The notes beneath the pieces are model-generated. The model saw only the letters and a program-made list of their open reading frames with translations. It did not search any database and had not been told where the DNA came from. The position numbers and the translations under genes were made by a program. This document shows positions 13,001 through 47,000 of a DNA stretch of 64,000 nucleotides, piece after piece; the first letter of the stretch is position 1; every line of letters starts with the position of its first letter. Source of the DNA: Macrostomum hystrix (Eukaryota; Animalia; Platyhelminthes); assembly GCA_950097015.1 (NCBI GenBank), contig CATNEN010000034.1, positions 5,208,001 to 5,272,000 of the forward strand, written 5' to 3'.

Positions 13001-14251
13001 CAGAGACGAACTTGATAACGTTCTTATGGTTGATATGTTTCTACTATGAGTAGTCTCTGACACACCTTGCCATTGCCTTCAACCCCGCTGCAGTTCTACA
13101 AGGAGTTCTACCAGCTGGCCTCAAAGTTGGAAGATCCCGAGCAGCTGGGACTGGCCTGCGAGGCCCTGGCAGTGGCCTATGAGAAGTGAGCCTTGACATC
13201 GAGTTGCCCCTTTGGGCCCGATTCAAACAATAATCAAAATCAAATTAATCAAAATCAAAATTAATCAAACACAAACATTTCAACAGGCAGGGCAAAGTGG
13301 ACGCCAACGTGAAGTACCTGGAGGAGTTCGCCAAGGTCACCGAGGGCAAGCAGGACCGGCTGTTTAGCCGGGCGTGTCGCGGCCTCGGAGCCGCCTTTAA
13401 TAAGCAGGTGAGAGAGACGGACTGCATTTCAATGAGTTCAAAGTGTGAGCAAACGGGTCGCAGCGGGTCGGTGGCAGAGCGGTCTCACGCGTTTGCCTCT
13501 CGCACCAAGGTCCCAAAGCTCGATTCCCCGACGAGGCCACATTTATTTGGGGGCTTGTCGTGCAATATACGACCATTAGGGCCCATCCCCAAGGCACAGT
13601 GCGATTCTACACTGCCTGACGATGAGAAAGTCAGGGCAGATGTACACACCTGTGTGAGTGTGTCTTTAGGAGTCAGAGGAATCGCCTCTTCGCTGGCTGC
13701 GGGTCTATACTGTCACCAAATGATGTGCCATTTCCCGCAGCCCTCCTGCAAGTATTACAAATAATAATCGCAATAATTACACCCGAACTATTCAGGGTGA
13801 CTTCCAACGTGCAGCGGACTACTTCAGCAAGGCCTTCAGCGTCGCTCGCACCCTCCAGGACAAGGAGGACATCTACCTGACCCGCATGCAGTACGGCATC
13901 AGCCAGGCCTTCTCCTTCTTGTCGCCCTACACTGAGCAGCTGCGCTCCGCCACCCCAAAGTCTATGGCCAACCTGCTCACCTGGAAGGAGGTGCGCAAGA
14001 ACGAGGAGTTAAAGAAGCCGCCGGCCGACCGTCCGCCGGAGACGCTGGCCTCGCGCCGGCCAGCGGCTCGCCGACCTCCGGCGCACGTTCAGGCGGCCGA
14101 GGAGGCCGAGCGGAGGCGCGCCGCTGAAGCCGCAGCTGAAGCAGCCAAGGCGAAGGTGGCCGCCGAGATTGCAGCGGCAGCGAAGGCGGCGGCGCCAGCT
14201 CCAGCGGTACCGGCGGCGGACAAACCGGACTCGGGCAAGAAGGCCAAATAG
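7056..14251 (+). CDS. TTC29: Tetratricopeptide repeat protein 29; exons 7056-7231, 7797-8020, 8415-8893, 13094-13185, 13287-13407, 13796-14251 (~515 aa)
   Basis: All junctions are GT-AG and phase-consistent (total 1548 nt). Motifs DGFHRTFTEM, LWQIKPLEDQPEKL, DKWLSDHYYDRC, KLAEAHYNKGL, ACEALAR and LLTWKE match the TTC29 family (human DGYHKSFTEL, FWLQKPLEEQPDKL, DKWVRNHFYERC, LLSWKE). Confidence 0.9.
8063..8370 (-). mobile_element. tRNA-derived SINE copy 1 (5'-truncated), occupies most of TTC29 intron 2
   Basis: Reverse complement of the consensus seen at 13465-13765; (ATT)n-type tail at about 8063-8090. Confidence 0.85.
8903..9205. repeat. Minisatellite, 23 bp unit GACAGGTGTGCTGTTCTCTGAGT, starting right after the TTC29 exon 3 donor
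   Basis: About 12 tandem units. Confidence 0.95.
9245..12760 (-). mobile_element. Decayed non-LTR retrotransposon (LINE; APE endonuclease + RT + C-terminal Cys-rich motif), antisense in TTC29 intron 3
   Basis: Minus-strand fragments: EN (DIVFLCET, DDFNAR, STIDY; 12760-11668), RT (KAAGVDGISNE, YRPISVL, KSAFDMV, GVRQGCPLSPLLF, CCDD; 11628-10794) and C-terminus (RFRLGNHKL...RTCPKC..VENE; 10392-9811). It has several frameshifts and stops, and catalytic residues are mutated (SDH to SKH, motif A Asp to Gly, YADD to CCDD). A possible (AAT)n tail lies at about 9210-9245. Clade (CR1/L2/RTE-X groups) not resolved; ends approximate. Confidence 0.9.
13465..13770 (+). mobile_element. tRNA-derived SINE copy 2, occupies most of TTC29 intron 5
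   Basis: Head with A box TGGCAGAGCGG (13472-13482) and B-box-like GCTCGATTCC (13518-13527), conserved body hairpin, and 3' CCCTCCTGCAA followed by an AT-rich tail. Confidence 0.88.
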
Positions 14252-15078
14252 GTGGCTTCGACTCGACGCGCTGTTTTAACTTTCGCTCTGACAGTTTTCC
14301 GCCGCTGCTCTCTCCCTGTTGCATCTGGTGTTCTCCGTGTGTGACACCTCCGTGTGTCAGGAGGTGTCATTGAAGGGAAGTCTAGCTGGCGGCTTACGTT
14401 AAAAAAGCACTATATATTAGTCAGTACATTTGTACCTTATGAGTTCGCGTGTCCTATGACACGTGTACTTTTGGTATATATGTACTTTGCAGATAAACAT
14501 GGGCCTTTTAGAACTTTTGTACTTTATGAGTGATTACATATGTACTTTAGCAGTGCCTGTGTACTTAATGAGTGCATATGTACTTTAGTAGTTCCTGTGT
14601 ACTTTATGAGTGCATATGTACTTTTTAAGTAAATATGTGCTTTTTAGTACTTGGACAACTCTATTAATTCATATGCACTTCAGTCTATAATATTCGACCA
14701 GTTAGAACCAAGCCAAATTGAAAATGCGTCGGGGCCGTTTACACCTCTGCTTATACTCGTATTGCTCTTGTCTGAAAAAATAATTCGCACCATATATTTT
14801 GATTGCAAATTGACAAACCGAGCGATTATTAACATTCTACTAGACAAGTAGCTGAAAATGTTTCGTGTTGAAAAAGCTGTTTGACGTAAATTGCTAATTT
14901 AATAAAAAAACTTATTATGTACATCAATTTGCTACTAAATAAAGTAAGGAGAGCGTCTAAATAATTGGATTTTTTTCTCTACTATTCAATTCGACAACAT
15001 GTTTTGTGTTCTTATTTTTTCTAGGTAGAATTTTAATCAATAATGACCAAGTGTACTCTAGTGTCATAAATTTTACAA

Positions 15079-15407
15079 GGGGGTCGGTGGGACAGCCTCT
15101 CGTTTGCCTCTCGCACCATGGTCCCTAAGCTCGATTCCGCGGCGAGGCCACATTCATCTGTGGCGCAACCGCGGAGAGAAGACTTGGGCTTATCATGCAA
15201 TTTACGCCCTTGAGGGCCAACCTCCAAAGATAGTGAGTGTACACTGCCTGACGAAGAGAAACTTAGGGCAGATGTACACACCTGTGTGAGCGTGTGCCTG
15301 TGTTCGGTATCTGTGTGCGTGTGTGCTCAGGAGTCAGCCTAAAGGGCAGAATCGCCTCAGCACTGGCTGCGGGTCGAGTGTCACAAATGATGTGTCAGCA
15401 TGCTGCA

Positions 15408-34200: not shown

Positions 34201-34992
34201 TGATTGACAATAAAAATTTAATTAATTTTTCAAGAAAATAACAACAGTTCAATTGTACGAATTTCCCTAGGAAGCATGCGATTTATTAGATTGCGGAGCA
34301 AATTGGGGTCTTGGGATTCGACAGGACTAACTTCCTTTCACCCAAGTCTCCGCTATTATGTTCGACAACCTCATCCTCCACTTCGTTCTCACAGGCGGTG
34401 AGTCCGCCTCCCTACTGGACAGAAGTGACTCGCTGCCAGTGGACGATCTGGGCATGGGCGACCGTCTGCAGTCCGGCTTCATTGGCCAGCAGGCCCGAAG
34501 GAGCAAGCAACAGCAGCAGCAGCAGCAGCTGCTACCCCCGCCGCCTCAACCATCCTACTCCAGGCAGCAGCCGCAGCAGGCGGACCCTCCAGCTCCATCG
34601 GCCAGCAACCGGCGGGGCAGCTTCCAGTCGATGCGAACCCTGAGCCTGGACCAGCAGGCAGCCGCGGGCCTCGACCCGGCTGACAACAACGGCAAAATGG
34701 CGTCGAAATCGATGGACTCCTGCCTGGACGAGCAGCGACCTACCGGGTCAGACAGCGAGTCGGCGACGAATGCTCGTCAAGGTCAATCGTCTTATCAACA
34801 GCAACAGCAACAGCAGCAACAGCAGCAGCAGGCAGTGCGCAAGAAGCGCCCCAGTCTCCGGATGAAGCTGGGCAGAATCGGCTCCGGTCGACAATTCGGC
34901 CGCAGCGGCAGCGCATGCGGCAGCAACTCGACAGAGGCGCCTACTGCTGACGAGGTCGACGCTGAGGACTCGCCTTTGAAGGGCCAGTCGGC

Positions 34993-35024
<32 letters not shown>

Positions 35025-38000
35025 GTGCTACAGCAACGGCAGCCGGAGAAGATCTTGAACTAGGCGAGATGGAAGATCCCAAGCAGAGCACCTCCAGCTA
35101 CCTCAAGGAGCAGTTCTTTGCATTCTTCCAGCCTTCTGACAACAAGTTGGCGATGAAGCTGTTTGGCAACAAAAACGCCCTGCTGAAGGAGAAGCGTCGC
35201 CAGCAGCAGTCGGGCAAATGGATCATTCACCCGTGCAGCAACTTCAGGTAAGCGGCGGAGAGGCGGTCAAATAGAGAGCCTCATTAGGCCTCACTGAAAA
35301 GTGCGCAGGCGTAATAAGTACCTTTGTGAGGCAGTTAGACAGTCGGCAATAAATTATCCGACACGAGGAAAGCAATAAATAAAGAGAAAAAACTTAGTTC
35401 AATGATTGAGTTTCTTTTCGAAATCGAACTCCCTGGAAGACTTTCTATCTGTAAATACAAAGCTGTGAATATCGGGCCAGGAAGACAGATGCAGTGGTCT
35501 ATGAAGCTTCGCGAAGTCGAGGCAATCTTCTGCTGAGGAGGAAAAAGTTAAGGCAGCGTTGGCTTAGGCTAAGTGCAGGCCCTAATCACTTACAACTTGT
35601 TCGTCTAACGAGTAGCATATACCGGAGACTATAGAGTGCAGTAGGAGAGCCAGATGAAGCAATCAAGGATTCCCTGTATTTCTCTTTGGCCTTCGAATTG
35701 CGCAGCTTCCAGTAGTTTTACGAGCTTAATCTACGGTCTAACAAACTGGCTGTTCTCCTATATTTTGCGCAATGTTTTTAATGCACTTCATTGGGTCACA
35801 GAGTTTATTGTATTTAGCTCCTCATCGAACGAGGAAATTCGGCTGCATAGGAAATTACACGGGTTCTTTTTGCTGCAGAAGAAAGTAAAGAAACATCCGC
35901 ATCAATGGGAGATTCGCCCCTCACCTGATCTTGACATTCGTCTAACATCTACCCGTTGCGAGCTTTCACTTTCTCGGTTTATCCCTCCTCTTAATTTCTT
36001 CCCCCTAAACACGTTTCCAGGGAAAATTCCAATGCCAGACGAAAGATTGATCAGATTAAGGAAATTGTACGCGTTCGCTTTCCCATTTATATGATCATTA
36101 AATTGAAAGGCCAAAATAATTCATATAGAAATAAGCCTGTGTGCACAAGCCTTTGGTAGAAAAGCCAAAATTAGGCTTTTACTTTCATTATCCTTTAGTT
36201 TTATCAGCGTTTTTTATTCAAAACTTTCTGAGGATAAATTCCCATAAAAATAGCTGAGATCCTTAACGAACATAGACGAACATCCCGGATCCCAATGCTG
36301 AGCATCCCGGATCCCAATGCTGAACATCCTGGATCCCAATGCTGAGCATCCCGGATCCCAATGCTGAGCATCCCGGATCCCAATGCTGAGCATCCCGGAT
36401 CCCAATGCTGAGCATCCCGGATCCCAATGCTGAACATCCTGGATCCCAATGCTGAACATCCTGCATCCCAATGCTGAACATCCTGGATCCCAATGCTGAA
36501 CATCCCGGATCCCAATTCTAAACATCATGGATACAAATGCTGAACATCCCGGATCCCAATGCTAGACATCCTCGATCCCAATGCTAGACATCCTGGACCC
36601 CAATGCTGAACATCCTGGATCCCAATGCTGAACATCCTGGATCCCAATGCTGAACATCCTGGATCTCAATGCTGAATGCAAAGGTATTAACTATCGCTAC
36701 GATTATTGGGATAGTTTAGCTGTACAAGTAGCCAGGCCATTTTGGATTATTGTTGGTCCCATAAAAATCTGGCATTGCAAGACCATGGCCTATTTGTATA
36801 GGCAAGCAAATAAATACCTCTTGTCAAATTGATGAGGAACGAAATTGCTTCAAGCGACTCATTAAACGGAAGAGACATTTATTTGGACAAAATCCGGTTT
36901 CCACAGGCCAGTAGCAAAGTTCTCTTCTGTTCGGCCCTCTTTTCTCTTTACTCATCCTGCCGAGTTTTTCTTTTGCCTCAACGCAGTCGACAGAAGAGTG
37001 GATCGGTGGGTTGGCGAGTAATCAGCGGAGGAGAGAATAAAGAGGAAGAGAAGCAGGACGAATGAGAAAGGGGAGATTTTCGGTCAACGGGGCTTTGAGC
37101 AGACGGAATCGACCAGTTGGTCCTCTTCTGCCTTAATGACGGGGGTGGCGTAGAGGAGAAAGACTGAGCAGCAACAACAAGTGCGCACGGCACACCAGGC
37201 CTGTCCCATTCCGAAATCTCTTCCCAAAATGACAGTGCCTCTCCTTGCTTGGCCGGTGGTCGACTCCAAATGCGTGCCTAGACACTTGCCCGCGACGGCC
37301 AAATCGATGCGAACCGGCCCAAGAGTATCAATTAGCGGCTTTCGGCCACCATCAAATCACCGGAGCGCTAAACTGGCTCCCGCACCTTGGCCAAACAATT
37401 TGGTCTTGTTTCTTGTTTTCTCTTCATTCGGAAAATTCCAACACTTGATGGGATACTGAAGTGCGCTGTTTATATTTAAACACAGTCGTTCATATGGTTC
37501 ATTTAACAGTAGAGAGGCATTTTTCGGGTGGCATTTCAAATACTCGCAGCCTACTTCACGAAACCGAATGACCGATTTTCGTGAACGTCCACCATGGATT
37601 GGCCACCTTGGTGGGTGGAACCGCGACGGAGACGCGGCTGCAATTTGGTTCCAGTGATTCTTGTCGAAGACCCTGGCGACAAGGCAACTAGCATTGCTCT
37701 GTGTCACCCCGACAAGAATCTTTGAATAACCAGACGATTTCGCTGCTTTGTGATTCTGGAAGTTGTGTAATCGGGTTGAGCGAAAACTTTAAGGCCATGT
37801 TCTGAACTATCATGTCAACTGGTTGAATATTTAGGGAGATCCAGAAAAAGAAAGATGTGGGTATTTAAAGTACATTCCCGTAGTCTTTCTACTGTTAACG
37901 ACCACAAATCAAACTGGAAAGTGAATTAAAGTGAGCTGAATAAACAATTTTTCAGATTCTACTGGGACCTCCTGATGCTAATGCTGCTAATCATTAACCT

Positions 38001-41000
38001 GGTTGTGCTCCCAGTGGCCATATCGTTCTTCAACGAAGACCTCAGTCCGCACTGGATTATATTCAACTGCGTGTCGGATACCATCTTTTTAAGCGACATT
38101 GCTGTCAACTTTAGAACAGGTACGAGACGGCAATACAGTTCGTTTTCAAGTTTATTATATTTTAATAATTCTAGCTTTAGCACTTCTTTAAGCGTAACTC
38201 TAATTGGCTTAAGGGGTAGGAAGTTTTCTGAGCGCTTTAGTGGTCAGAAATTGTGCTGATCTCTGATTGGCTGGAAGGGTGAAACTGCAAGCGCTGATAT
38301 ATTATGATTGGCTTGACAGCCAAAATAATATAGGCAGAGGTTAGGCAGAAGTTAATCAAAGCAGTTTTCTGCTGATAAGTCAGAAAGATAAAACAATTTA
38401 CCGACAAGAACTTCCGACCAACCAGATTTTCTGTGATGAGAAAGAACGATGATTCAGGAAACAAGTCAGCTAGATAAAGATACAGAAAAATAAAAGAAAA
38501 ATGTTTCTGTTTCTAATGGATATTCATCGATGCATTCTTGACGGAATAAAGAAGATTTAAGTCAAGAACACAGAAGGGAGGCACTGAAGCGTACCTCGAT
38601 TGCAGGCTCCTGCAACAGCTCTTCCTCCTTAGAGGGCCGCCGATGCCACTTGATTCAGAAAATCACCTGGCCTCATTAATTTCGTCTGCTAACTGCAGTT
38701 TCGTCTGTAGACTCTTCAGCCTGGCAATCACGTAGAACTAATAGAGGCTCACCCACTTATCTCTATGCTCAAGGCGTGATCACAAACGACTTTGCCGAAG
38801 AGATCATACTCGACCCCAAGATGATAGCGCAGCACTATGTCAAGTCTTGGTTCTTCCTCGACCTCATCTCATCAATTCCAATGGACTACATATTCCTGGT
38901 GCTAAACCAGCGGAACAACATCAGCCAGCTCGTGCACGCAGGTGAGACCATACTAAATTTTTTCAGCCAATCAGATTAGACTTGAAAGAAGGCCGAATTT
39001 CTTTTGCAGGCCGAGCGCTGCGCATCCTGCGGCTGGCCAAGCTGCTCAGCCTGCTGAGACTGCTCCGTCTGTCTCGATTGGTCCGCTATGTCAGCCAATG
39101 GGAGGAAGTAAGTCTAATTTTTATAATCAGATTTTGATATTCATTAAAACACAAAAATGTACATTGCTTTACTAACCATTCTTTTATTGGCGTAGACGTA
39201 TTGCGTAACGTATAATAGTAAGCGCCAGGGACTGTTTGAAAGGCCTATCTAAAAGCCCCGGTCGGCTTGTATGTCAGTCTCTCTCTGTGTCTGGTTTCAG
39301 TTTTTTCAAATTGCCAGCAAGTGCTTCGGTATTATCAAGCTGGTGCTAATCATGATGCTGCTCGGTCACTGGAACGCCTGCTTCCAGTTTCTCATACCGT
39401 TTCTCAGCGATTTCCCGAGCGACTCCTGGGTGGCTAAGCGTGGACTAAAGGTGACTCTGGGTTGACTAGGCTTCAAATTTGACCAGGTCCATGACTGTCC
39501 TTGAGAATGAATTATTGATCTAAAACACCGAAGATCACAAGCAAACTCCCATTGCACAATCTAGCCAGGTTGTCAGAGATGCCTAAATATAACTTGCGAT
39601 TCAACAGCCTTTCCGGTACACTGACGTCTGGCTCAGGGTTTTGCTTTGCGGAGTTAGTTGAACTTCGGTGTGCATTGATCAGCAATTTCCTCGCTCCTGC
39701 CCTGTACATCCTTGATCCCGGTTCTGAACATCCTTGATCCCGATTCTGAACATCCTTGATCCCAGTTCTGAACATCCTTGATCCCAGTTCTGAACATCCT
39801 TGATCTCAGTTCTGAACATCCTTGATCCCGATTCTGAACATCCTTGATCCCAATTCTGAACATCCGTGATCCCAGTTCTGAGCATCCTTGATCCCGGTTC
39901 TGAGCATCCTTGATCCCAATTCTGAACATCCGTGATCCCAGTTCTGAGCATCCTTGATCCCGGTTCTGAGCATCCTTGATCCCAATTTGGTTGTGGCACA
40001 TTGCCTGAGAATTGAACAATCACTGAAGTCCATGACTCGCGGCTCATTGCTTCAAGCCTCAAGCTTTCTGGCCCCAGAAAATTGAAGTCATGGCTGCATG
40101 GAATTTCTTTTTCGAAGCGTCATTGGTTTTGATTTTATTGATCTAAGAGCAAATGGTCTCAGCTTTCTCTTGTCAAGGAACTGTGAGATATCATAGTTAT
40201 AGTAGCCTTAGCTTACTGACACAATTCCAACACATGTTTTATAGTCATAATCTACGTAGTTAATCCTGATTTGTGCACTTAGTTAGTCTGTGGTCCCTGA
40301 TCATTTGTTTCTTTGTTCGGAAGTATTTTTTCGATAGGATGTTATAATTCGTGGCTAAAATGGATTCATTTTCATTTATAATAGTAAATATGAATGAGTT
40401 ATTGACACTCCATCCTGGCCCTTGCACTCCTGTTTGACAAGACATTCCAAGCACAAACTCACTCACACACACACACCTGCTTTCAGTTGCTGAACGTTGC
40501 CAATAAGTTTATGGGGATATTTAACCTCGTGCTGCTGATGCTGCTGCTTGGCCACTGGAACGCCTGCCTGCAGTTCCTGATCCCCCTGCTTCAGGACTTC
40601 CCGGACCAGTCCTGGGTGGCCCGTTGCGGCCTGAAGGTGAATTTTTCGTGGCCTCTTCACTCACAGCATCTGTACTCAGCCTTCCTTCCTCATTTCATTC
40701 AACCAAGATGCTCGCATGCTTAGCATTGTTCGAAGCGTTCTTCAGCTCGTGTTAACAATGCAATCTTGCACTTTTGCAGTTTTAAGGTCTACTTTAAACA
40801 TGTATGGCATTTTTTATCAACAAAGCAAGAATCGCAAAATTTAAGCAACCGCTCGTGCGGTTTTATGTGGAGAATATCCCTACAGATTGACATGTTCACC
40901 AATTAGAAAATGCACTTTCTTATCCTTCGGTATTGTGTAAAGCCTTTTTGTACAGCACGCAAATTTGTATGTTTTTTAAATTATTATCTTTATCGCTTTT

Positions 41001-44000
41001 CGGATAAATTTAAGCCATTCAACTGGCATTGCTACCGTGACCCGAGGTGAATCAGACCAGGTGCAATTGTTGCCCTTCAAACAGTCTGTCATGTCTGTTC
41101 TCTTTCCAGCTGCTAAATGTAGCGTCAGTGTTCATCCGGGTCGTGAACCTAGTCTGCCTGATGCTGCTGCTGGCGCACTGGAATGGCTGCCTGCAGTTCC
41201 TTGTGCCAGCTATCCAGGACTTCCCCAAGGACTCCTGGGTTAGGAAGCTAAACATCCAGGTACCGCCTCCCCGCCTCACCTTACTCCTGAGACTGTATGA
41301 TAAGCCGGAGTCTGAAAATTTAGTTTTTACCTTCATCAGTTTTGTTACCATATTTTTTTTATTCTGATGAATTAGTTACTAAATTTTACTTTGACTTAAA
41401 TTTTGCTCTCATGAATTCACAATGTATTTCACAGAAAAAAATCATTTCTTCACTAACTAACCGATTTATAGTGGAACAAAAGCAATTAAACCAAGCCCAG
41501 CAACAACTACCCAAAGCTGTGTACAAAGCTTCCACACATACCCGACATCAGTTCAGCTCTTTTTTTATTTATTCAGGATAAAATTTTTAATTCTACTCGT
41601 TATTAGAAATTTTCTCTAATTTATAGGAGTCTTCATTTGTAACTTTAAAAAGTTCAGCATTGTTAGCGCTAATGCACATTAACATGGAATAAGCGCTCAC
41701 CTGTTTAACAAACATTCGCATGAGTGACTATACACTCGCATGCAAAGTACTTGCATGAACAATACCGTATATACACTCTGTTTAAAATATGTTTATTTCC
41801 GCATGTTGAACGCATATTCTGACAAGAAAGTTAATTGGACGGAAATGAGAAACAAAGGACAAACAAGGTTCCAAAAAATCTAAAAAATTATGACGCTTCG
41901 AAAAATGCTCGCCACAATGCGCATCTTGAAGCAGCAGAGCCCTCAACCGCGGGACAAGCACACATGACGACACATATTTAACAGTAGAACTACCAAGGGG
42001 GGGGGGAATTCCCCCCCTGACAATTTTTTTGCTGCACCCGAACGGAACAATGCAGGCACACGAAACTCAAGAACACGGGCCAACTTTTTGTTGCGCATCT
42101 TCTGAAACAAGAAACAAGTCGCCAGCTCTTCAGACCGTCGAGATATTCAATGTTTCTGGCCGAAGGTCCGATTTTTCCCATAAGAGCTTGTGTATTTCAT
42201 ACACCCCTATACACGAATTTGCAGTGCGCCTCAGTGCGGCCTTTCCAGGCCTTCAAACTTTATCAGCATGTCACCCGAATGTGCCTGCATCATCTCCGAC
42301 TTCGGCGGTCACCGACCTTTATCTAGACGGAGCAGCTGGACCTTCAACAAGTAATAGTTGAGTTTAAGCCAATATCGAGGCTTTATTAGAGAAAGTTGAA
42401 AAATTCGCTTTAGGGACTCCATTGCCAGCAGGAGGCACCCTGCTGACGGTGCTGACGGCGTCGGGTGGTGACTGATTGGTTGACGGACTAGAGGAGCATG
42501 TAAAGTAGTTGAGTGTTGCCCAATATCGAGGCTTGATCAGCGAAAGTAGAGAAATTCGCTTTAGGGACTCCATAGTCGGCTGGTGCCACTTGTTGAAGGT
42601 CCAGCAGCTCCGTCTAGATAAAGGTCGGTGACCGCCGAAGTCGGAGATGATGCAAGCACATTCGGGTGACATGCTGATAAAGTTTGAAGGTCTGGAAAGG
42701 CCGCACTGAGGCGCAGTGCAAATTCGTGTATTGGGGCGTATGAAATACACTTACTCTTATGGGAAAAATCGGACCTTCGGCCAGAAACATTGAATATCTC
42801 GACGATGTCGATGTTTTGAGATTCTGGAGGCTTTTCATCTGATAGAGCGGAAAATGTTTGGACTTTTATGCGGATTGCTTGAATCTTTTTTGAGATACCG
42901 AAAAACAATTTTTTTAATTGTTAATCAGTTAATCAGTTTTTCTACGTTTAAAATGAAAGATACAAAACAGAAACAGTGTGGGCTGCCACGGTTGAAGGCT
43001 GTAAGCTGTCAAATCCTTCTGCCAAGTCTAAAAAAACTCCCTTGCGTTCCCAGAATGCGATTATCATTGATTTATTGATTAGTCCACAATTCTCAGTCCG
43101 TTTATCCCCCCCAAACACATTGTCCCCATTCTGCAACGCCAACGACCACGGTCGACGCTCGGACAGGAGGTGCACTGGTTCCAGCAGTACACCTGGGCCC
43201 TGTTCAAAGCCATGAGTCACATGCTGAGCATTGGCTACGGTCAGCACCCGCCAACAAGCATCAGCGAGGCCTGGATCACCATCGTCAGCATGATGACGGG
43301 ATCGTCCTGCTATGCCCTGTTTGTTGGCCATGCGGCTGCTCTCATTCAGAGCTTCGACACATCGAAACGTTTGTACAGAGAGAAGGTGAGTCCAGTTAAT
43401 TCTGTAGTTAAATGAATTTTTCAGGGGGTGGCAGAAGGCATAACGTGTTTGCCTCTGGCACCAAGGTCCCTGAGCTGGATTCTCTTGCGAGGCCACATTC
43501 ATTTGGGGCGCAGCCGCGGAGAGAAGGCTTGGGGGCTTGTCTTGCAATTTACGCCCTCGAGGGCCAACCTCCAAGGCACAGTGAGAGTGTACACTGCCTG
43601 ACGATGAGAAATTCAGGGCAGATGTACACACCTGTGTGAGCGTGTGTCTGTGTACGGTATCTATGTGCGTGTGTGCTCAGGAGTCAGCGAAATGGGCAGA
43701 ATTTCCCCCTCACTGGCTACGGGCCCTTTGACACCAAGTGATGTACCAGTGGCCCCTAACCCTCCTGCAATTATTATTGTTATTACGAGCTATTATAAAA
43801 TTATTCTGTGATGCTTTTTATCGCGAAGGTAAACATTAAAGGTAACGATTCTGACAAAAGTTCCCCATTTTCTATAAGCGCAACCTTTTAGATCGCTGCT
43901 AAGTACACCTCGAGGTATACCAATTAGTTTAAATTTCATCCCATTGTCGACTACATCTACCTGTATATACGCTGAGGGAATCTCATTAGGCTTTTCTACC

Positions 44001-47000
44001 TGTTAATATTTTAACTTTTATCACTTGTTCCTAAAAACCTGGCCTAATCAGTTCAAGCAGGTTGAGGAGTACATGGCCTATCGAAAGCTGCCGCGAGCAC
44101 TGCGTCAAAGGATTGCCAACTACTATGAGCACCGCTATCAGGGCAAGATGTTTAACGAGAACGACATCCTGAGCGAGCTGTCCGAGTGTCTGCGCGAGGT
44201 GAGAAAGCTTTGGAGATGGTTTGCAGAACGCGTAACTCCGACTGTACAAACAGAACCTCAATTCAAGCACGTGCTCTTGTACATACCTCAGAGAGTGTTC
44301 TAGTACATACCTCAGAGAGTGTTCTAGTACATACCTCAGAGTGTGTTCTAGTACATACCTCAGAGAGTGTTCTAGTACATACCTCAGAGAGTGTTCTAGT
44401 ACATACCTCAGAGAGTGTTCTAGTACATACCTCAGAGAGTGTTCTAGTACATACCTCAGAGAGTGTTCTAGTACATACCTCAGAGAGTGTTCTAGTACAT
44501 ACCTCAGAGAGTGTTCTAGTACATACCTCAGAGAGTGTTCTAGTACATACCTCAGAGAGTGTTCTAGTACATACCTCAGAGAGTGTTCTAGTACATACCT
44601 CAGAGAGTGTTCTAGTACATACCTCAGAGAGTGTACTAGTACATACCTCAGAAAGTGTACTAGTTTCAGAAAGTTCAGAAAGTTCAAGTACCTTAAGTAC
44701 AAATACCAACAAAATATGTCTCACTAAGAAGCCTACAGAATATCGTTAACCCAACCATCCTTACCACATCCAACCAGCAAATCATCAACTACAACTGCCG
44801 CGCCCTGGTGGCGGCGGTGCCATTCTTCACTTACGCCGATCAGGACTTTGTCTCCGAGGTCGTCACCCGACTCAAATACGAAGTTTTCCAACCTGGCGAT
44901 CTCATCATCAAGGAGGGCACCATAGGCACCAAGATGTACTTCATTCAGGAGGGCATTGTGGACATCATTACGAGAGACGGGGAGGTAGCGACCAGCCTGT
45001 CGGATGGGTCCTACTTTGGAGGTGAGGCTGCTTCTCGCACCAAGGTCCCTGAGCTCGATTCCGCCGCGAGGCCACATTCATTTGGGGCTTGTCATGCAAT
45101 CTACGCCCTTGAGGGCCAACCTCCAAGGCACAGTGAAATGTACACTGCCTGACGATGAAAAAGTCATGGCAGATGTACAACCCTGATGTACAGATGTGAG
45201 CGTGTGTCTGTGTACGGTATCTGTGTGCGAGTGTGCTCAGGAGTCAACGAAATGGGCAGAATTGTCTCCTGGCTTGCTCACCATTGCCAGCAGCCCTCCT
45301 GCCATTATTATTTAGATTTTTACTATTAACCACGTTGGTCTTCAAACTTTCTTATAAACTACGAGTACAAGGAGCTTCTAGGAAAAACACTAAAACTTAG
45401 GTCGTTCTCAATCAATCGATGACATAGGCGCGAATCCTCCAATTCTCACCTTTTTCCTATCATTAGTTTATCGAATTCTTTGGCCGAATTCTCGCATTCG
45501 ACCCCGGCTCATTTCGGTCTGTGGAGGAGGATGGGGTTGGCTGCAGCTAGCAACGGCAGCTTCCCAGGTATTGAGTCGCAGCTAATTGAGTTTTCGTCCG
45601 TGCGTGGGCCACAGGCACTATTGTGAGCAGAGCAACCAATTTTGTCTCTGCTTCCCCCCGTCCACTGAGATTGATTCCTGTGTAGTTAATCGCCTGCCAC
45701 GCTTATTAGTGACTCGAAGAATCCTGATAGATAGATAAGACAGGCACGGATGGGATTCAGAATATGAGATCTGGGGAGTTGGAGCGCGGAGGGGGAATTG
45801 TCGTTCGAGGAGTGAGAGAGACTCAATTTTTCCCCTTCGTGGGAGTTTCCCAGAGAGACACAGAGTAGGGAGAGTTCAGATTCCGCACCGCCCTGGGGGC
45901 CGGACACTAATGAGGACCGAGTTTGCCGTATCGGTGGGGACTGCGGCAATGCCTGCCTGTGGAAACCCGCTCCCCTACTCTAAAGGGTTTGGAAATCCCA
46001 TCTGATAAGTGCGGCTGTGCGTTTTTCCAGGAAAACTTTTCGGGAATTACAGCTTAATGTATATTTTTCATTGTGAAGCTTTCAAACTAGATAGAAAATT
46101 TGTTGCATTTATCTTGTCTGCAAAATTGAATTCCCAAATAGGTCTGGGATTAAAGTGTGTTAAAATGACTCGGCCAAATGGGGAAAAATTAATAATTATG
46201 ACTACATTCATTTGTTTTTGTGTGAAAAAATCATGTACAAATATAGAACAATTGCCGAACTGATGCCATGACTGACACCACCGATTCAATGTTCCAAAAC
46301 ACTTGTGCAATGACCCAAATCACCGATACCATGACCCAAACACTGACATAATGACCTAAAACATTGATATAATGACCCAAGAAACAATAACCCAAATCTT
46401 GAGATCATGACTCAAGCCATCGATAGAATGATCCAAATAACTAACTTCATGACCCAAACAACTGATACAATTACCCAAACCGCCGATGCAATGACCCAAA
46501 CCACTGATACAATGACCCAAAACACTGACATCATGACCTAAAACATAGATATAATAAACCAGATAAAATAAATATAATAATAGATATAATAAGCAACAAT
46601 GACCCAAGCCATTGATAAATGACCCGAATCACTGACGCAATGACCCAAGCCATTAACGCCATGACCCAAAACCGCCGATGCAATGACCCAAACCACTGAT
46701 ACAATGACCTAAACCACCGATGAAATCACTCAAATCGCAGAGATTTGCCTGCTGACAAATGCCAGACGAGTAGCCAGCGTCCGTGCCGAGACCTACTGCA
46801 ACCTGTACTCTCTGGAGAGGGAGAATTTCCTGTCCGTGCTGGACAACTATCCGCTGATGCGTCGCACCATGGAATCCGTGGCCGCGGAAAGGCTGAGCAA
46901 GATTGGCCAGAACCCACAGATGGTGAGCAGTCGAGCTGATCTCAAAGAGGACCTCAACCTGGTCAAGGAGATTGTCAACCAGGTTACACCGGCTACCAGC

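What the first reader, a model, noticed from the sequence alone, without database searches (positions are those of the whole stretch)
39301..41259. Three tandem homologous S4-S5/S5/turret exons in the HCN gene: candidate mutually exclusive exon cluster
Seen: three intact exons (39301-39450, 40487-40636, 41110-41259), each exactly 150 nt, phase 0-0, with canonical AG/GT and no stops. Each encodes the same segment (HWN.C.QFL.P...DFP.DSWV) and they lie between one S4 exon and one pore exon. Known: HCN subunits have a single S5, so a functional transcript can hold only one. Inference: this is a mutually exclusive exon cluster giving three channel isoforms that differ in the voltage-sensor-to-gate coupling region. 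Because 150 is a multiple of 3, double inclusion would not trigger NMD, so an active exclusion mechanism is needed. I am not aware of a described triple S5 cluster in HCN genes, but I could not search the literature.
Basis: partly seen in the sequence, partly recalled or inferred. Interest (0 to 1): 0.88.

Follow-up and report, generated by a model that had tools for sequence, protein, structure and literature searches.

The report
Three swappable S5 exons, flatworm HCN
A flatworm pacemaker-channel (HCN) gene carries three alternative versions of one 150-base exon, all kept intact by selection, and apparently chooses one per transcript through a conserved RNA base-pairing switch best known from insects.

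Summary
Observation confirmed. Exons 39301-39450 (A), 40487-40636 (B) and 41110-41259 (C) are each 150 nt, phase 0-0, AG/GT-flanked, stop-free and 46-64% identical as protein. They lie between one S4 exon (39006-39107) and one pore exon (43167-43387) of an HCN gene of a Macrostomum-like flatworm.

The mutually exclusive reading is largely supported.
- Two Macrostomum lignano loci keep A, B and C in the same order. Per-exon dN/dS is 0.03-0.07 at dS 0.6-0.85, while the introns no longer align.
- RNA contigs identical to the window splice S4->B->pore, skipping A and C.
- Transcript-based M. lignano models splice S4->A->pore, and S4->C.

New here: a docking site (core GACGCTTCGAAA, 41892-41903) after exon C is complementary to selectors after exon A (40109-40122) and exon B (40729-40739). 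These are the only conserved intronic islands shared with M. lignano and the docking site's two strongest duplex partners. This is a 14-3-3zeta-type competing-structure layout.

Not shown: A or C spliced in this species, and absence of co-inclusion.

Tandem S5 exons also occur in mollusc, annelid and copepod HCN genes. Two parasitic-flatworm loci examined have only a B-type exon.

The scan noted the same triplication in a paralogue on another piece of this genome, and RNA-pairing exon choice in another gene.

The parts
39006..39107 (+). Constitutive S4 exon (…[14 protein letters not shown]), the upstream partner of the cluster
   Evidence: Sequence and gtaagt donor. The RNA joints 38937->39006 and 39107->40487 fix both ends. 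It is 89% identical to M. lignano P0151.
39301..39450 (+). Alternative S5 exon A ([14 protein letters not shown]…HWNAC…AKRGLK)
   Evidence: It is 96% aa identical to exon A of M. lignano L001 and L002, with dN/dS 0.047. The transcript-based M. lignano model P0151 reads S4-A-pore. In the window's species it was seen only unspliced (X2 contig 39160-39483).
40109..40122 (+). Selector A: conserved island TTTTCGAAGCGTCA in the A-B intron. The full pairing arm is 40108-40139.
   Evidence: The arm is complementary to the docking site over 32 nt at 78%, including a 16-nt perfect stretch. The same island lies at the equivalent place in L001 (27070-27083) and L002. It is the best duplex partner of the docking site among 543 windows (-33.5 kcal/mol, z -4.5).
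40487..40636 (+). Alternative S5 exon B ([14 protein letters not shown]…HWNAC…ARCGLK). It is the only form seen spliced in the RNA contigs of this species.
   Evidence: Joints 39107->40487 (X1, X2, X5) and 40636->43167 (X1, X2) were found, and one 1380-nt contig spans S4-B-pore with no mismatches. dN/dS against M. lignano is 0.032. It is 76-82% identical to the single S5 exon of S. japonicum and Anoplocephala.
40729..40739 (+). Selector B: conserved island TTCGAAGCGTT, 93 nt after exon B. The pairing arm is 40722-40738.
   Evidence: The arm is 17 nt and 94% complementary to the docking site. It lies 91 nt after exon B in L001 and L002. It is the second-best duplex partner of the docking site (-33.3 kcal/mol, z -4.4).
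41110..41259 (+). Alternative S5 exon C ([14 protein letters not shown]…HWNGC…RKLNIQ), the most canonical HCN S5
   Evidence: It gives the best match to solved HCN chains (59 bits). dN/dS against M. lignano is 0.073. The transcript-based M. lignano model P0018 joins S4 to C. In the window's species it was seen only unspliced (X2 contig 41079-41283).
41874..41909 (+). Docking site in the intron after exon C. The invariant core GACGCTTCGAAA is at 41892-41903.
   Evidence: It is complementary to both selectors through the same core, so only one pairing can form at a time. CGCTTCGAA occurs once, and its reverse complement twice, in each of the window (64 kb), L001 and L002, always in this arrangement. 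It is one of the only conserved 11-mer islands in these introns.
43167..43387 (+). Constitutive pore/S6 exon ([10 protein letters not shown]…SIGYG…LYREK), the downstream partner of the cluster
   Evidence: Sequence. The RNA joint 40636->43167 and contigs cover 43165-43385 in all four runs. It is 92% identical to P0151.

Best explanation
This is a cluster of three mutually exclusive exons in an HCN (Ih) channel gene of a Macrostomum-like flatworm. Each exon encodes the last residues of the S4-S5 linker, the S5 helix and the first residues of the turret. One exon is spliced between the single S4 exon and the single pore exon, giving three channel isoforms. Exon choice is most likely made by competing RNA secondary structures of the downstream-docking type. 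One docking site after exon C can pair either with a selector after exon A or with a selector after exon B. Pairing with selector A loops out B and C and brings A next to the pore exon. Pairing with selector B loops out C. With no pairing, C, which is nearest the pore exon, would be the default. Shown: the exon anatomy; purifying selection on all three exons; S4-B-pore splicing in this species; A-only and S4-C transcript models in M. lignano; conservation and overlap of the complementary elements. Inferred: that the pairing forms in vivo and drives choice; how exon A is skipped when B or C is chosen; strict exclusivity; and functional differences between isoforms. For example, A and B carry Gly where exon C and human HCN1 carry Arg (HCN1 R297). 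From memory, that residue is the S4-S5 linker arginine R339 of HCN2, implicated in channel closure.
For: Anatomy.
HCN identity: (solved HCN1/3/4 chains). P0151 carries Ion_trans_N, Ion_trans and cNMP_binding, and the window's exons are 84-99% identical to it.
Selection: the window against M. lignano L001 gives dN/dS 0.047, 0.032 and 0.073 at dS 0.58, 0.85 and 0.75. All splice sites are kept, while blastn aligns only exons. L002 is the same. A third M. lignano paralogue, P0295, also holds A, B and C.
RNA: joints 39107->40487 and 40636->43167, with one 1380-nt contig spanning S4-B-pore at 100% identity.
M. lignano GenBank models come from a genome-guided transcriptome (PMC5730564). PAA85143.1 reads ...QWEE|exon A|EAHWFRQY, and PAA78447.1 reads ...QWEE|exon C.
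RNA switch:
- Complementary arms are present in the window and in L001.
- The 9-mer core occurs once forward and twice in reverse complement in each locus.
- These are the only conserved complementary 8-mers and essentially the only conserved 11-mers in the four introns.
- They are the docking site's two best duplex partners in the window and lie among the top three in L001.
- A 10-mer triple of this kind arises in 15 of 2000 dinucleotide shuffles of one species' introns.
- The flanks of the invariant core differ between species yet still pair, for example window AATGCT/AGCATT against L001 TTTGC/GCAAGT.
The layout matches the downstream-docking variant described for 14-3-3zeta, Mhc and MRP1 (PMC6071210).
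Against: Spliced use of A or C was not seen in the four RNA runs of the window's species. Only unspliced contigs cover them, though contigs drop minor isoforms.
The exon C model in M. lignano runs on into the following intron, so it shows the S4->C joint but not C->pore.
No selector was found for exon C.
A downstream docking site alone does not explain how exon A is skipped when B is chosen.
Only two lineages were compared (the window and M. lignano; L001 and L002 are near-copies), so covariation rests on few events.
The core contains the palindrome TTCGAA and could also be a protein-binding motif.
One older M. lignano prediction (P0295) strings A, a partial B and C together. The incomplete B suggests a prediction artefact, but low-level co-inclusion is not excluded.
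Confidence: 0.78

Rival explanations
1. Exon B is effectively constitutive in this species, and A and C are unused or rarely used relics of old tandem duplications, so there is no real isoform diversity here.
For: Only S4-B-pore joints were recovered from four RNA runs. A and C appear only in unspliced contigs. S. japonicum and Anoplocephala manage with a single B-type exon.
Against: A and C have intact frames and splice sites. Their dN/dS is 0.05-0.07 at dS 0.6-0.75 against M. lignano, as good as the constitutive exons, while the surrounding introns are unalignable. Transcript-based M. lignano models use A and C. Contigs from whole-animal RNA drop minor, cell-type-restricted isoforms.
Confidence: 0.08
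2. The cluster is mutually exclusive, but the conserved intronic elements act as binding sites for a splicing regulator protein, or choice is made by other means, and not through RNA-RNA pairing.
For: The invariant core holds the palindrome TTCGAA, so part of the motif reads the same on both strands. No selector was found for exon C. Pairing has not been probed experimentally. Only two lineages were compared.
Against: The downstream element is the reverse complement of the two upstream ones over 10-16 nt, beyond the 6-nt palindrome. A protein motif on the RNA would be expected in one orientation. The pairing extends into flanks that differ between species yet stay complementary. The selectors are the energetically best partners of the docking site in the whole region. 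The arrangement is that of known downstream-docking clusters (PMC6071210).
Confidence: 0.12
3. The exons are ordinary cassette exons that can be co-included, or the triplication is an assembly artefact of paralogues or haplotypes.
For: 150 nt is a multiple of 3, so co-inclusion would keep the frame. One M. lignano prediction (P0295) concatenates A, a partial B and C.
Against: Two or three S5 helices would break the six-helix topology. The P0295 model lacks the first residues of B, which suggests an ab initio artefact. The RNA contig holds exactly one exon between S4 and pore. The copies are 57-67% identical in DNA with unique introns. The same order is seen on two M. lignano contigs, and the RNA contigs match the window exactly.
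Confidence: 0.02

Closest known systems
Downstream-docking competing-RNA-structure MXE clusters of insects (14-3-3zeta exon 5, Mhc, MRP1), as summarised in PMC6071210
   Same: There is a small cluster of tandem homologous exons. A single docking site lies in the intron after the last variant. Selector sequences lie after the earlier variants, all complementary to the same docking core, so only one duplex can form. The elements are conserved while the rest of the intron is not.
   Different: The host is a flatworm and the gene is an ion channel (HCN). No selector was found for the last exon. The pairing is untested experimentally. Conservation is shown across two Macrostomum lineages only. A full-text search found no paper combining docking and selector terms with flatworms.
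Alternative splicing of arthropod Ih/HCN genes (Drosophila DmIh, at least 12 isoforms that share S1-S3, per PMC3344876 citing Gisselmann 2005; lobster PIIH splice variants, Ouyang 2007, cited in PMC4640657)
   Same: A single-copy invertebrate HCN gene is diversified by alternative splicing downstream of S3. Tandem S5 exons are present in a copepod HCN gene (Tigriopus P0354) and in unnamed sequences from environmental assemblies that resemble arthropod Ih.
   Different: I could not read the primary papers, so I cannot say whether S5 itself is among the described arthropod variants. The flatworm cluster has three copies, including a divergent HWNAC/Gly type that groups apart from arthropod S5 exons.
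Tandem S5 exon pairs in other lophotrochozoan HCN genes (Bulinus truncatus L004 5152-5301 and 5547-5696; Lamellibrachia satsuma KAI0208616.1)
   Same: The 150-nt, phase 0-0 exon has the same boundaries and is duplicated in tandem between the S4 and pore exons.
   Different: There are two copies, not three. The Bulinus pair groups together in the exon tree (97/85), which suggests an independent, younger duplication. Their splicing was not examined, and current annotations co-include both.
Mutually exclusive exons in other voltage-gated channel genes (e.g. insect sodium channel and Cav2 exon pairs; PMC3805903, PMC11828482)
   Same: Homologous exons encoding a transmembrane segment are swapped to tune gating.
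   Different: Those cases are a different channel family and different segments. Here the swapped piece is the S4-S5 linker end, S5 and turret of a hyperpolarization-activated channel.

Membership tests
[quoted passage not shown] | Six-TM Ion_trans core with a charged S4, a GYG pore and a C-terminal cyclic-nucleotide-binding domain | tested here: met
   The window's exons encode ...[17 protein letters not shown] (S4), SIGYG (pore) and a CNBD (FGEICLL-type). They are 84-99% identical to M. lignano P0151, which carries PF08412, PF00520 and PF00027. The S5 exons hit solved HCN1/3/4 chains at E 1e-10 to 1e-15 and CNG channels only at 1e-4 to 1e-5.
Mutually exclusive exon cluster from tandem exon duplication (criteria named in the title of PMC3228551) | Neighbouring exons of similar length | tested here: met
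   The exons are 150, 150 and 150 nt, adjacent, with nothing coding between them.
Mutually exclusive exon cluster from tandem exon duplication (criteria named in the title of PMC3228551) | Conserved splice sites and reading frame | tested here: met
   All are AG...GT and phase 0-0, in the window and in L001.
Mutually exclusive exon cluster from tandem exon duplication (criteria named in the title of PMC3228551) | Sequence homology between the exons | tested here: met
   46-64% aa identity, with tblastn E 1e-13 to 1e-19 between copies.
Mutually exclusive exon cluster from tandem exon duplication (criteria named in the title of PMC3228551) | Exactly one exon of the cluster in each mature transcript, and each exon used in some transcript | tested here: inconclusive
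   A B-only transcript contig was found in this species. An A-only model and an S4-C joint exist in M. lignano transcript-based models. Use of A and C in this species, and absence of co-inclusion, cannot be read from contigs.
Docking-site/selector competing RNA structures (downstream-docking variant; PMC6071210) | One docking site complementary to several selector sequences placed next to the variable exons | tested here: met
   The docking site at 41874-41909 pairs with 40108-40139 (after A) and 40722-40738 (after B).
Docking-site/selector competing RNA structures (downstream-docking variant; PMC6071210) | The pairings overlap on the docking site, so only one can form at a time | tested here: met
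   Both selectors pair with the same core ACGCTTCGAA.
Docking-site/selector competing RNA structures (downstream-docking variant; PMC6071210) | Evolutionary conservation of the docking and selector elements within otherwise diverged introns | tested here: met
   The same three elements lie at the same relative places in M. lignano L001 and L002. They are the only conserved complementary 8-mers and the only conserved 11-mer islands apart from one unrelated 11-mer.
Docking-site/selector competing RNA structures (downstream-docking variant; PMC6071210) | A selector for every variable exon | tested here: not met
   No dock-complementary element was found between exon C and the docking site. Exon C may be the unpaired default. 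A weaker third partner overlaps exon B's donor (40618-40657, -25.5 kcal/mol).
Docking-site/selector competing RNA structures (downstream-docking variant; PMC6071210) | Disruptive and compensatory mutations change and restore exon choice | not testable with these tools
   This needs minigene or genome-editing experiments.

The most novel reading that the evidence does not exclude
Selection of mutually exclusive exons by a docking/selector RNA switch operates in Platyhelminthes. Here it toggles the voltage-sensor-to-gate coupling region of the pacemaker channel between a canonical form (exon C, Arg at the position of HCN1 R297, HWNGC) and a flatworm-specific form (exons A and B, Gly, HWNAC). The split between the two exon types predates the divergence of Macrostomum from parasitic flatworms, and the latter later fixed the alternative type as their only S5.
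Probability: 0.5. Interest if true: 0.72.

Novelty: new member of a known kind. Interest (0 to 1): 0.62.

Why it matters
HCN channels open on hyperpolarization because of how S4 talks to S5 and the gate. Here nature supplies three interchangeable versions of exactly that interface in one gene. Two of them lack the arginine that I recall, from mammalian mutagenesis, as important for closure. They offer a ready-made set of chimeras for structure-function work.

For splicing biology, a conserved downstream docking site with overlapping selectors in a flatworm widens the range of animals in which competing RNA structures appear to choose between exons. Macrostomum lignano is transgenic-tractable (PMC5730564), so the switch can be tested.

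For parasitology, the single S5 exon of the schistosome and tapeworm loci examined is of the alternative type. The parasite channel therefore differs from host HCN in a gating-critical segment.

Tried and rejected
It is real in the window (15 nt, 93%), but its downstream arm is absent from M. lignano L001. I therefore do not count it as part of the mechanism.
- I looked for a fourth exon copy and for duplicates of other HCN exons in the window. There are none.
- I looked for RNA runs with better coverage. The single read-laying run gave B joints only. Contigs that start at the pore exon boundary (X2 record 13, X3 record 21) hint at other upstream partners, but their loose ends were not listed.
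- I looked for Macrostomum transcript fragments using A, B or C in the protein collections. Only annotated M. lignano models turned up. The locus of the third M. lignano paralogue (P0295) is not on record, and the Logan contig of P0016 has no DNA available.
- Literature: full-text searches for HCN plus mutually exclusive exons, and for docking/selector terms plus flatworms, found nothing relevant. The primary Drosophila and lobster Ih splicing papers and the Drosophila MXE catalogue are not held. Whether S5 variants are described in arthropods therefore stays open. One search was wasted on a loose setting.
- In the named arthropod entries I inspected, including RefSeq-annotated insect isoforms, I saw one S5 type. 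These entries give no evidence of alternative S5 exons in insects.

Full report
WHAT IS THERE

Each is 150 nt, open in frame 1, preceded by a pyrimidine tract and AG, and followed by GT. Their products are:
- A: [50 protein letters not shown]
- B: [50 protein letters not shown]
- C: [50 protein letters not shown]

Protein identity is 64% (A/B), 60% (B/C) and 46% (A/C). A tblastn of each against the whole window finds these three copies and nothing else. Each aligns to solved HCN1, HCN3 and HCN4 chains over HCN1 residues about 289-332, which cover the end of the S4-S5 linker, S5 and the first turret residues. Scores are C 59 bits, B 48 bits and A 43 bits.

THE GENE AND THE ORGANISM

On the + strand the window holds a complete HCN core:
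- N-terminal exon, about 34400-35248
- S1-S2, about 37951-38121
- S3, ending at 38937
- S4, 39006-39107
- the three S5 exons
- pore and S6, 43167-43387 (filter SIGYG)
- C-linker, about 44049-44198
- CNBD, about 44775-45020
- last exon, from about 46734

An exhaustive profile search with the three exons and cluster look-ups show that the nearest named proteins are flatworm HCNs. Exon C is 45/50 identical to Macrostomum lignano proteins. Exons B and A are closest to trematode, cestode and monogenean HCNs. The window is therefore from a Macrostomum-like flatworm but is not any of the M. lignano copies seen: exons are 84-90% identical in DNA and introns are unalignable.

ARE ALL THREE EXONS ALIVE?

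The M. lignano locus L001 (NIVC01000344.1) carries A, B and C in the same order with the same AG/GT boundaries. So does a second contig, L002. A third paralogue, known only as protein P0295, also holds all three.

Between the window and L001, synonymous divergence is high and non-synonymous divergence is tiny:

| Exon | dS | dN/dS |
|---|---|---|
| A | 0.58 | 0.047 |
| B | 0.85 | 0.032 |
| C | 0.75 | 0.073 |

blastn aligns only exons. This rules out neutral decay of any copy.

RNA EVIDENCE

Two run searches returned one study of small runs of the same organism. Their contigs match the window exactly and contain spliced joints:
- 38937->39006
- 39107->40487, in three runs
- 40636->43167, in two runs

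One 1380-nt contig reads S4, then exon B, then the pore exon. So A and C are both skipped in the dominant transcript. A and C appear only in unspliced contigs (39160-39483 and 41079-41283). Contigs drop minor forms, so this shows presence of the B form, not absence of the others.

In M. lignano, the GenBank gene models derive from a genome-guided transcriptome assembly (PMC5730564).
- PAA85143.1 (P0151) reads ...VSQWEE | exon A | EAHWFRQY..., that is S4-A-pore.
- PAA78447.1 (P0018) reads ...VSQWEE | exon C and then runs into the next intron.

Taken over the genus, each exon has transcript support, and every supported transcript carries only one of them.

HOW THE CHOICE IS PROBABLY MADE

The introns between the exons are long (1036 and 473 nt), so steric hindrance between splice sites is unlikely. 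All three exons have GT-AG ends.

A scan for inverted repeats found one element after exon C (41874-41909). It is complementary to an element in the A-B intron (40108-40139, including 16 perfect base pairs) and to another 93 nt after exon B (40722-40738, 16 of 17). Both pair with the same core, ACGCTTCGAA, so the two duplexes exclude each other.

The same arrangement is present in M. lignano:
- docking GACGCTTCGAAATTTGCCA, after exon C
- selector TGGCAGTTTTCGAAGCGTC, in the A-B intron
- selector GCAAGTTTCGAAGCGT, 91 nt after exon B

Further tests of the elements:
- The 9-mer CGCTTCGAA occurs once, and its reverse complement twice, in each of the 64-kb window, the 43-kb L001 and the 29-kb L002, always at these places.
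- Across the four cluster introns, these are the only complementary 8-mers conserved between the two species. Apart from one unrelated 11-mer, they are also the only conserved 11-mer islands.
- Sliding 40-nt windows over everything upstream, the docking site's best two duplex partners in the window are the two selectors (-33.5 and -33.3 kcal/mol against a mean of -10.8, SD 5.1). In L001 they lie among the top three.
- A 10-mer triple of this kind arises in 15 of 2000 dinucleotide shuffles of one species' introns. Its retention at dS of about 0.7 in three places is what makes chance untenable.
- Outside the invariant 12-nt core the arms differ between species but still pair.

This is the downstream-docking variant of the docking/selector model described for insect 14-3-3zeta, Mhc and MRP1 (PMC6071210).

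Gaps remain. No selector was found for exon C, which may be the unpaired default. The model alone does not explain why A is skipped when B is chosen. A weaker third partner overlaps exon B's donor. Nothing has been tested at the bench.

The pair noted by a sibling first-stage note (39230-39244 / 41072-41086) is real but not conserved.

WHAT THE ISOFORMS MIGHT DO

Exon C keeps Arg at the position aligned with HCN1 R297 and has HWNGC. A and B have Gly there and HWNAC. From memory, and not tested here, that arginine corresponds to HCN2 R339, an S4-S5 linker residue whose mutation disturbs channel closure. The isoforms may therefore differ in voltage dependence or standing current.

The Gly/HWNAC type is clearly functional. 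It is the only S5 exon in the Schistosoma japonicum and Anoplocephala loci, and every neodermatan HCN protein retrieved carries it.

EVOLUTION AND PRECEDENT

A 50-column tree has limited power. It groups A, B and all neodermatan S5 segments (support 98/96) apart from exon C, which sits with canonical bilaterian S5. The B/C split therefore seems to predate the Macrostomum-Neodermata divergence, with parasites keeping only the alternative type.

Tandem S5 exons with the same 150-nt, phase 0-0 boundaries also exist elsewhere:
- the gastropod Bulinus (two copies 245 nt apart)
- the annelid Lamellibrachia
- the copepod Tigriopus
- further unnamed sequences from environmental assemblies, mostly resembling arthropod Ih, seen as read-through ORFs

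The Bulinus pair looks like an independent duplication.

Drosophila Ih is reported to give at least 12 isoforms that share S1-S3 (PMC3344876). I could not read the primary papers, so I cannot say whether S5 is one of the variable parts.

Full-text searches found no description of HCN S5 mutually exclusive exons, and none of docking/selector pairing in flatworms.

The scan's own notes record the same triplication in a paralogous HCN gene on another piece of this genome (s1-337219). They also record an RNA-pairing-selected exon array in another gene (s1-291350). I did not test either.

VERDICT

I file this as a new member of a known kind: a tandem mutually exclusive exon cluster with a downstream docking site. 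Two features raise its interest, namely the conserved RNA switch in a flatworm and the natural swap of a gating-critical HCN segment.

Noticed in passing
window 39702-39984: A 22-nt tandem repeat (CTGAACATCCTTGATCCCAGTT, 12.9 copies, 91% matches) lies in the A-B intron, between exon A and selector A.
   Followed up: partly
window 42136-42352 and 42588-42804: [quoted passage not shown] RNA contig depth is about 500-1500 here against about 5 elsewhere, so it is a high-copy, transcribed, MITE-like element. A long hairpin this close to the docking site might affect local RNA folding.
   Followed up: no
window 40618-40657: The third-best duplex partner of the docking site overlaps exon B's 5' splice site (-25.5 kcal/mol). 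In M. lignano L001 an extra GAAGCGTC copy sits 42 nt after exon B (27621). This may be a second, donor-masking contact for exon B.
   Followed up: partly
window 39230-39238; L001 25917-25925: GACTGTTTG is shared by the S4-A introns of both species. Its complementary partner upstream of exon C exists only in the window.
   Followed up: yes
window 43227-43241: The selectivity filter reads SIGYG rather than the CIGYG of vertebrate and arthropod HCN. Most flatworm HCN proteins retrieved also read SIGYG, but the Spirometra proteins P0177 and P0180 read CIGYG.
   Followed up: no
L003 60274-60423 (Schistosoma japonicum); L005 8677-8826 (Anoplocephala perfoliata): These parasitic flatworm HCN loci have a single S5 exon of the B (HWNAC, Gly) type and no C-type exon between S4 and pore.
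   Followed up: partly
L004 5152-5301 and 5547-5696 (Bulinus truncatus); P0001 (Lamellibrachia satsuma); P0354 (Tigriopus californicus): Tandem 150-nt S5 exons occur in mollusc, annelid and copepod HCN genes. Current gene models wrongly include both copies. They are likely unannotated mutually exclusive pairs.
   Followed up: partly
P0295 (M. lignano, UniRef): An older M. lignano gene prediction concatenates exon A, a truncated B and C into one protein with three S5 segments. This looks like an annotation error of the kind such clusters provoke.
   Followed up: partly
window about 13450-13620, 15070-15210, 43440-43600, 45050-45180: A short interspersed element recurs in several introns and flanks. 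It translates in one frame to ...RPHxFG...[19 protein letters not shown]... The region is also rich in minisatellites (21-29 kb, 44.2-44.7 kb, 54-60 kb).
   Followed up: no
P0240, P0191 (insect Ih entries): Some insect Ih entries carry extra sequence between QWEEVY and the S5 exon (...LIFK|FLNMAS). This suggests optional micro-exons in the S4-S5 linker of arthropods, a different way of varying the same region.
   Followed up: no
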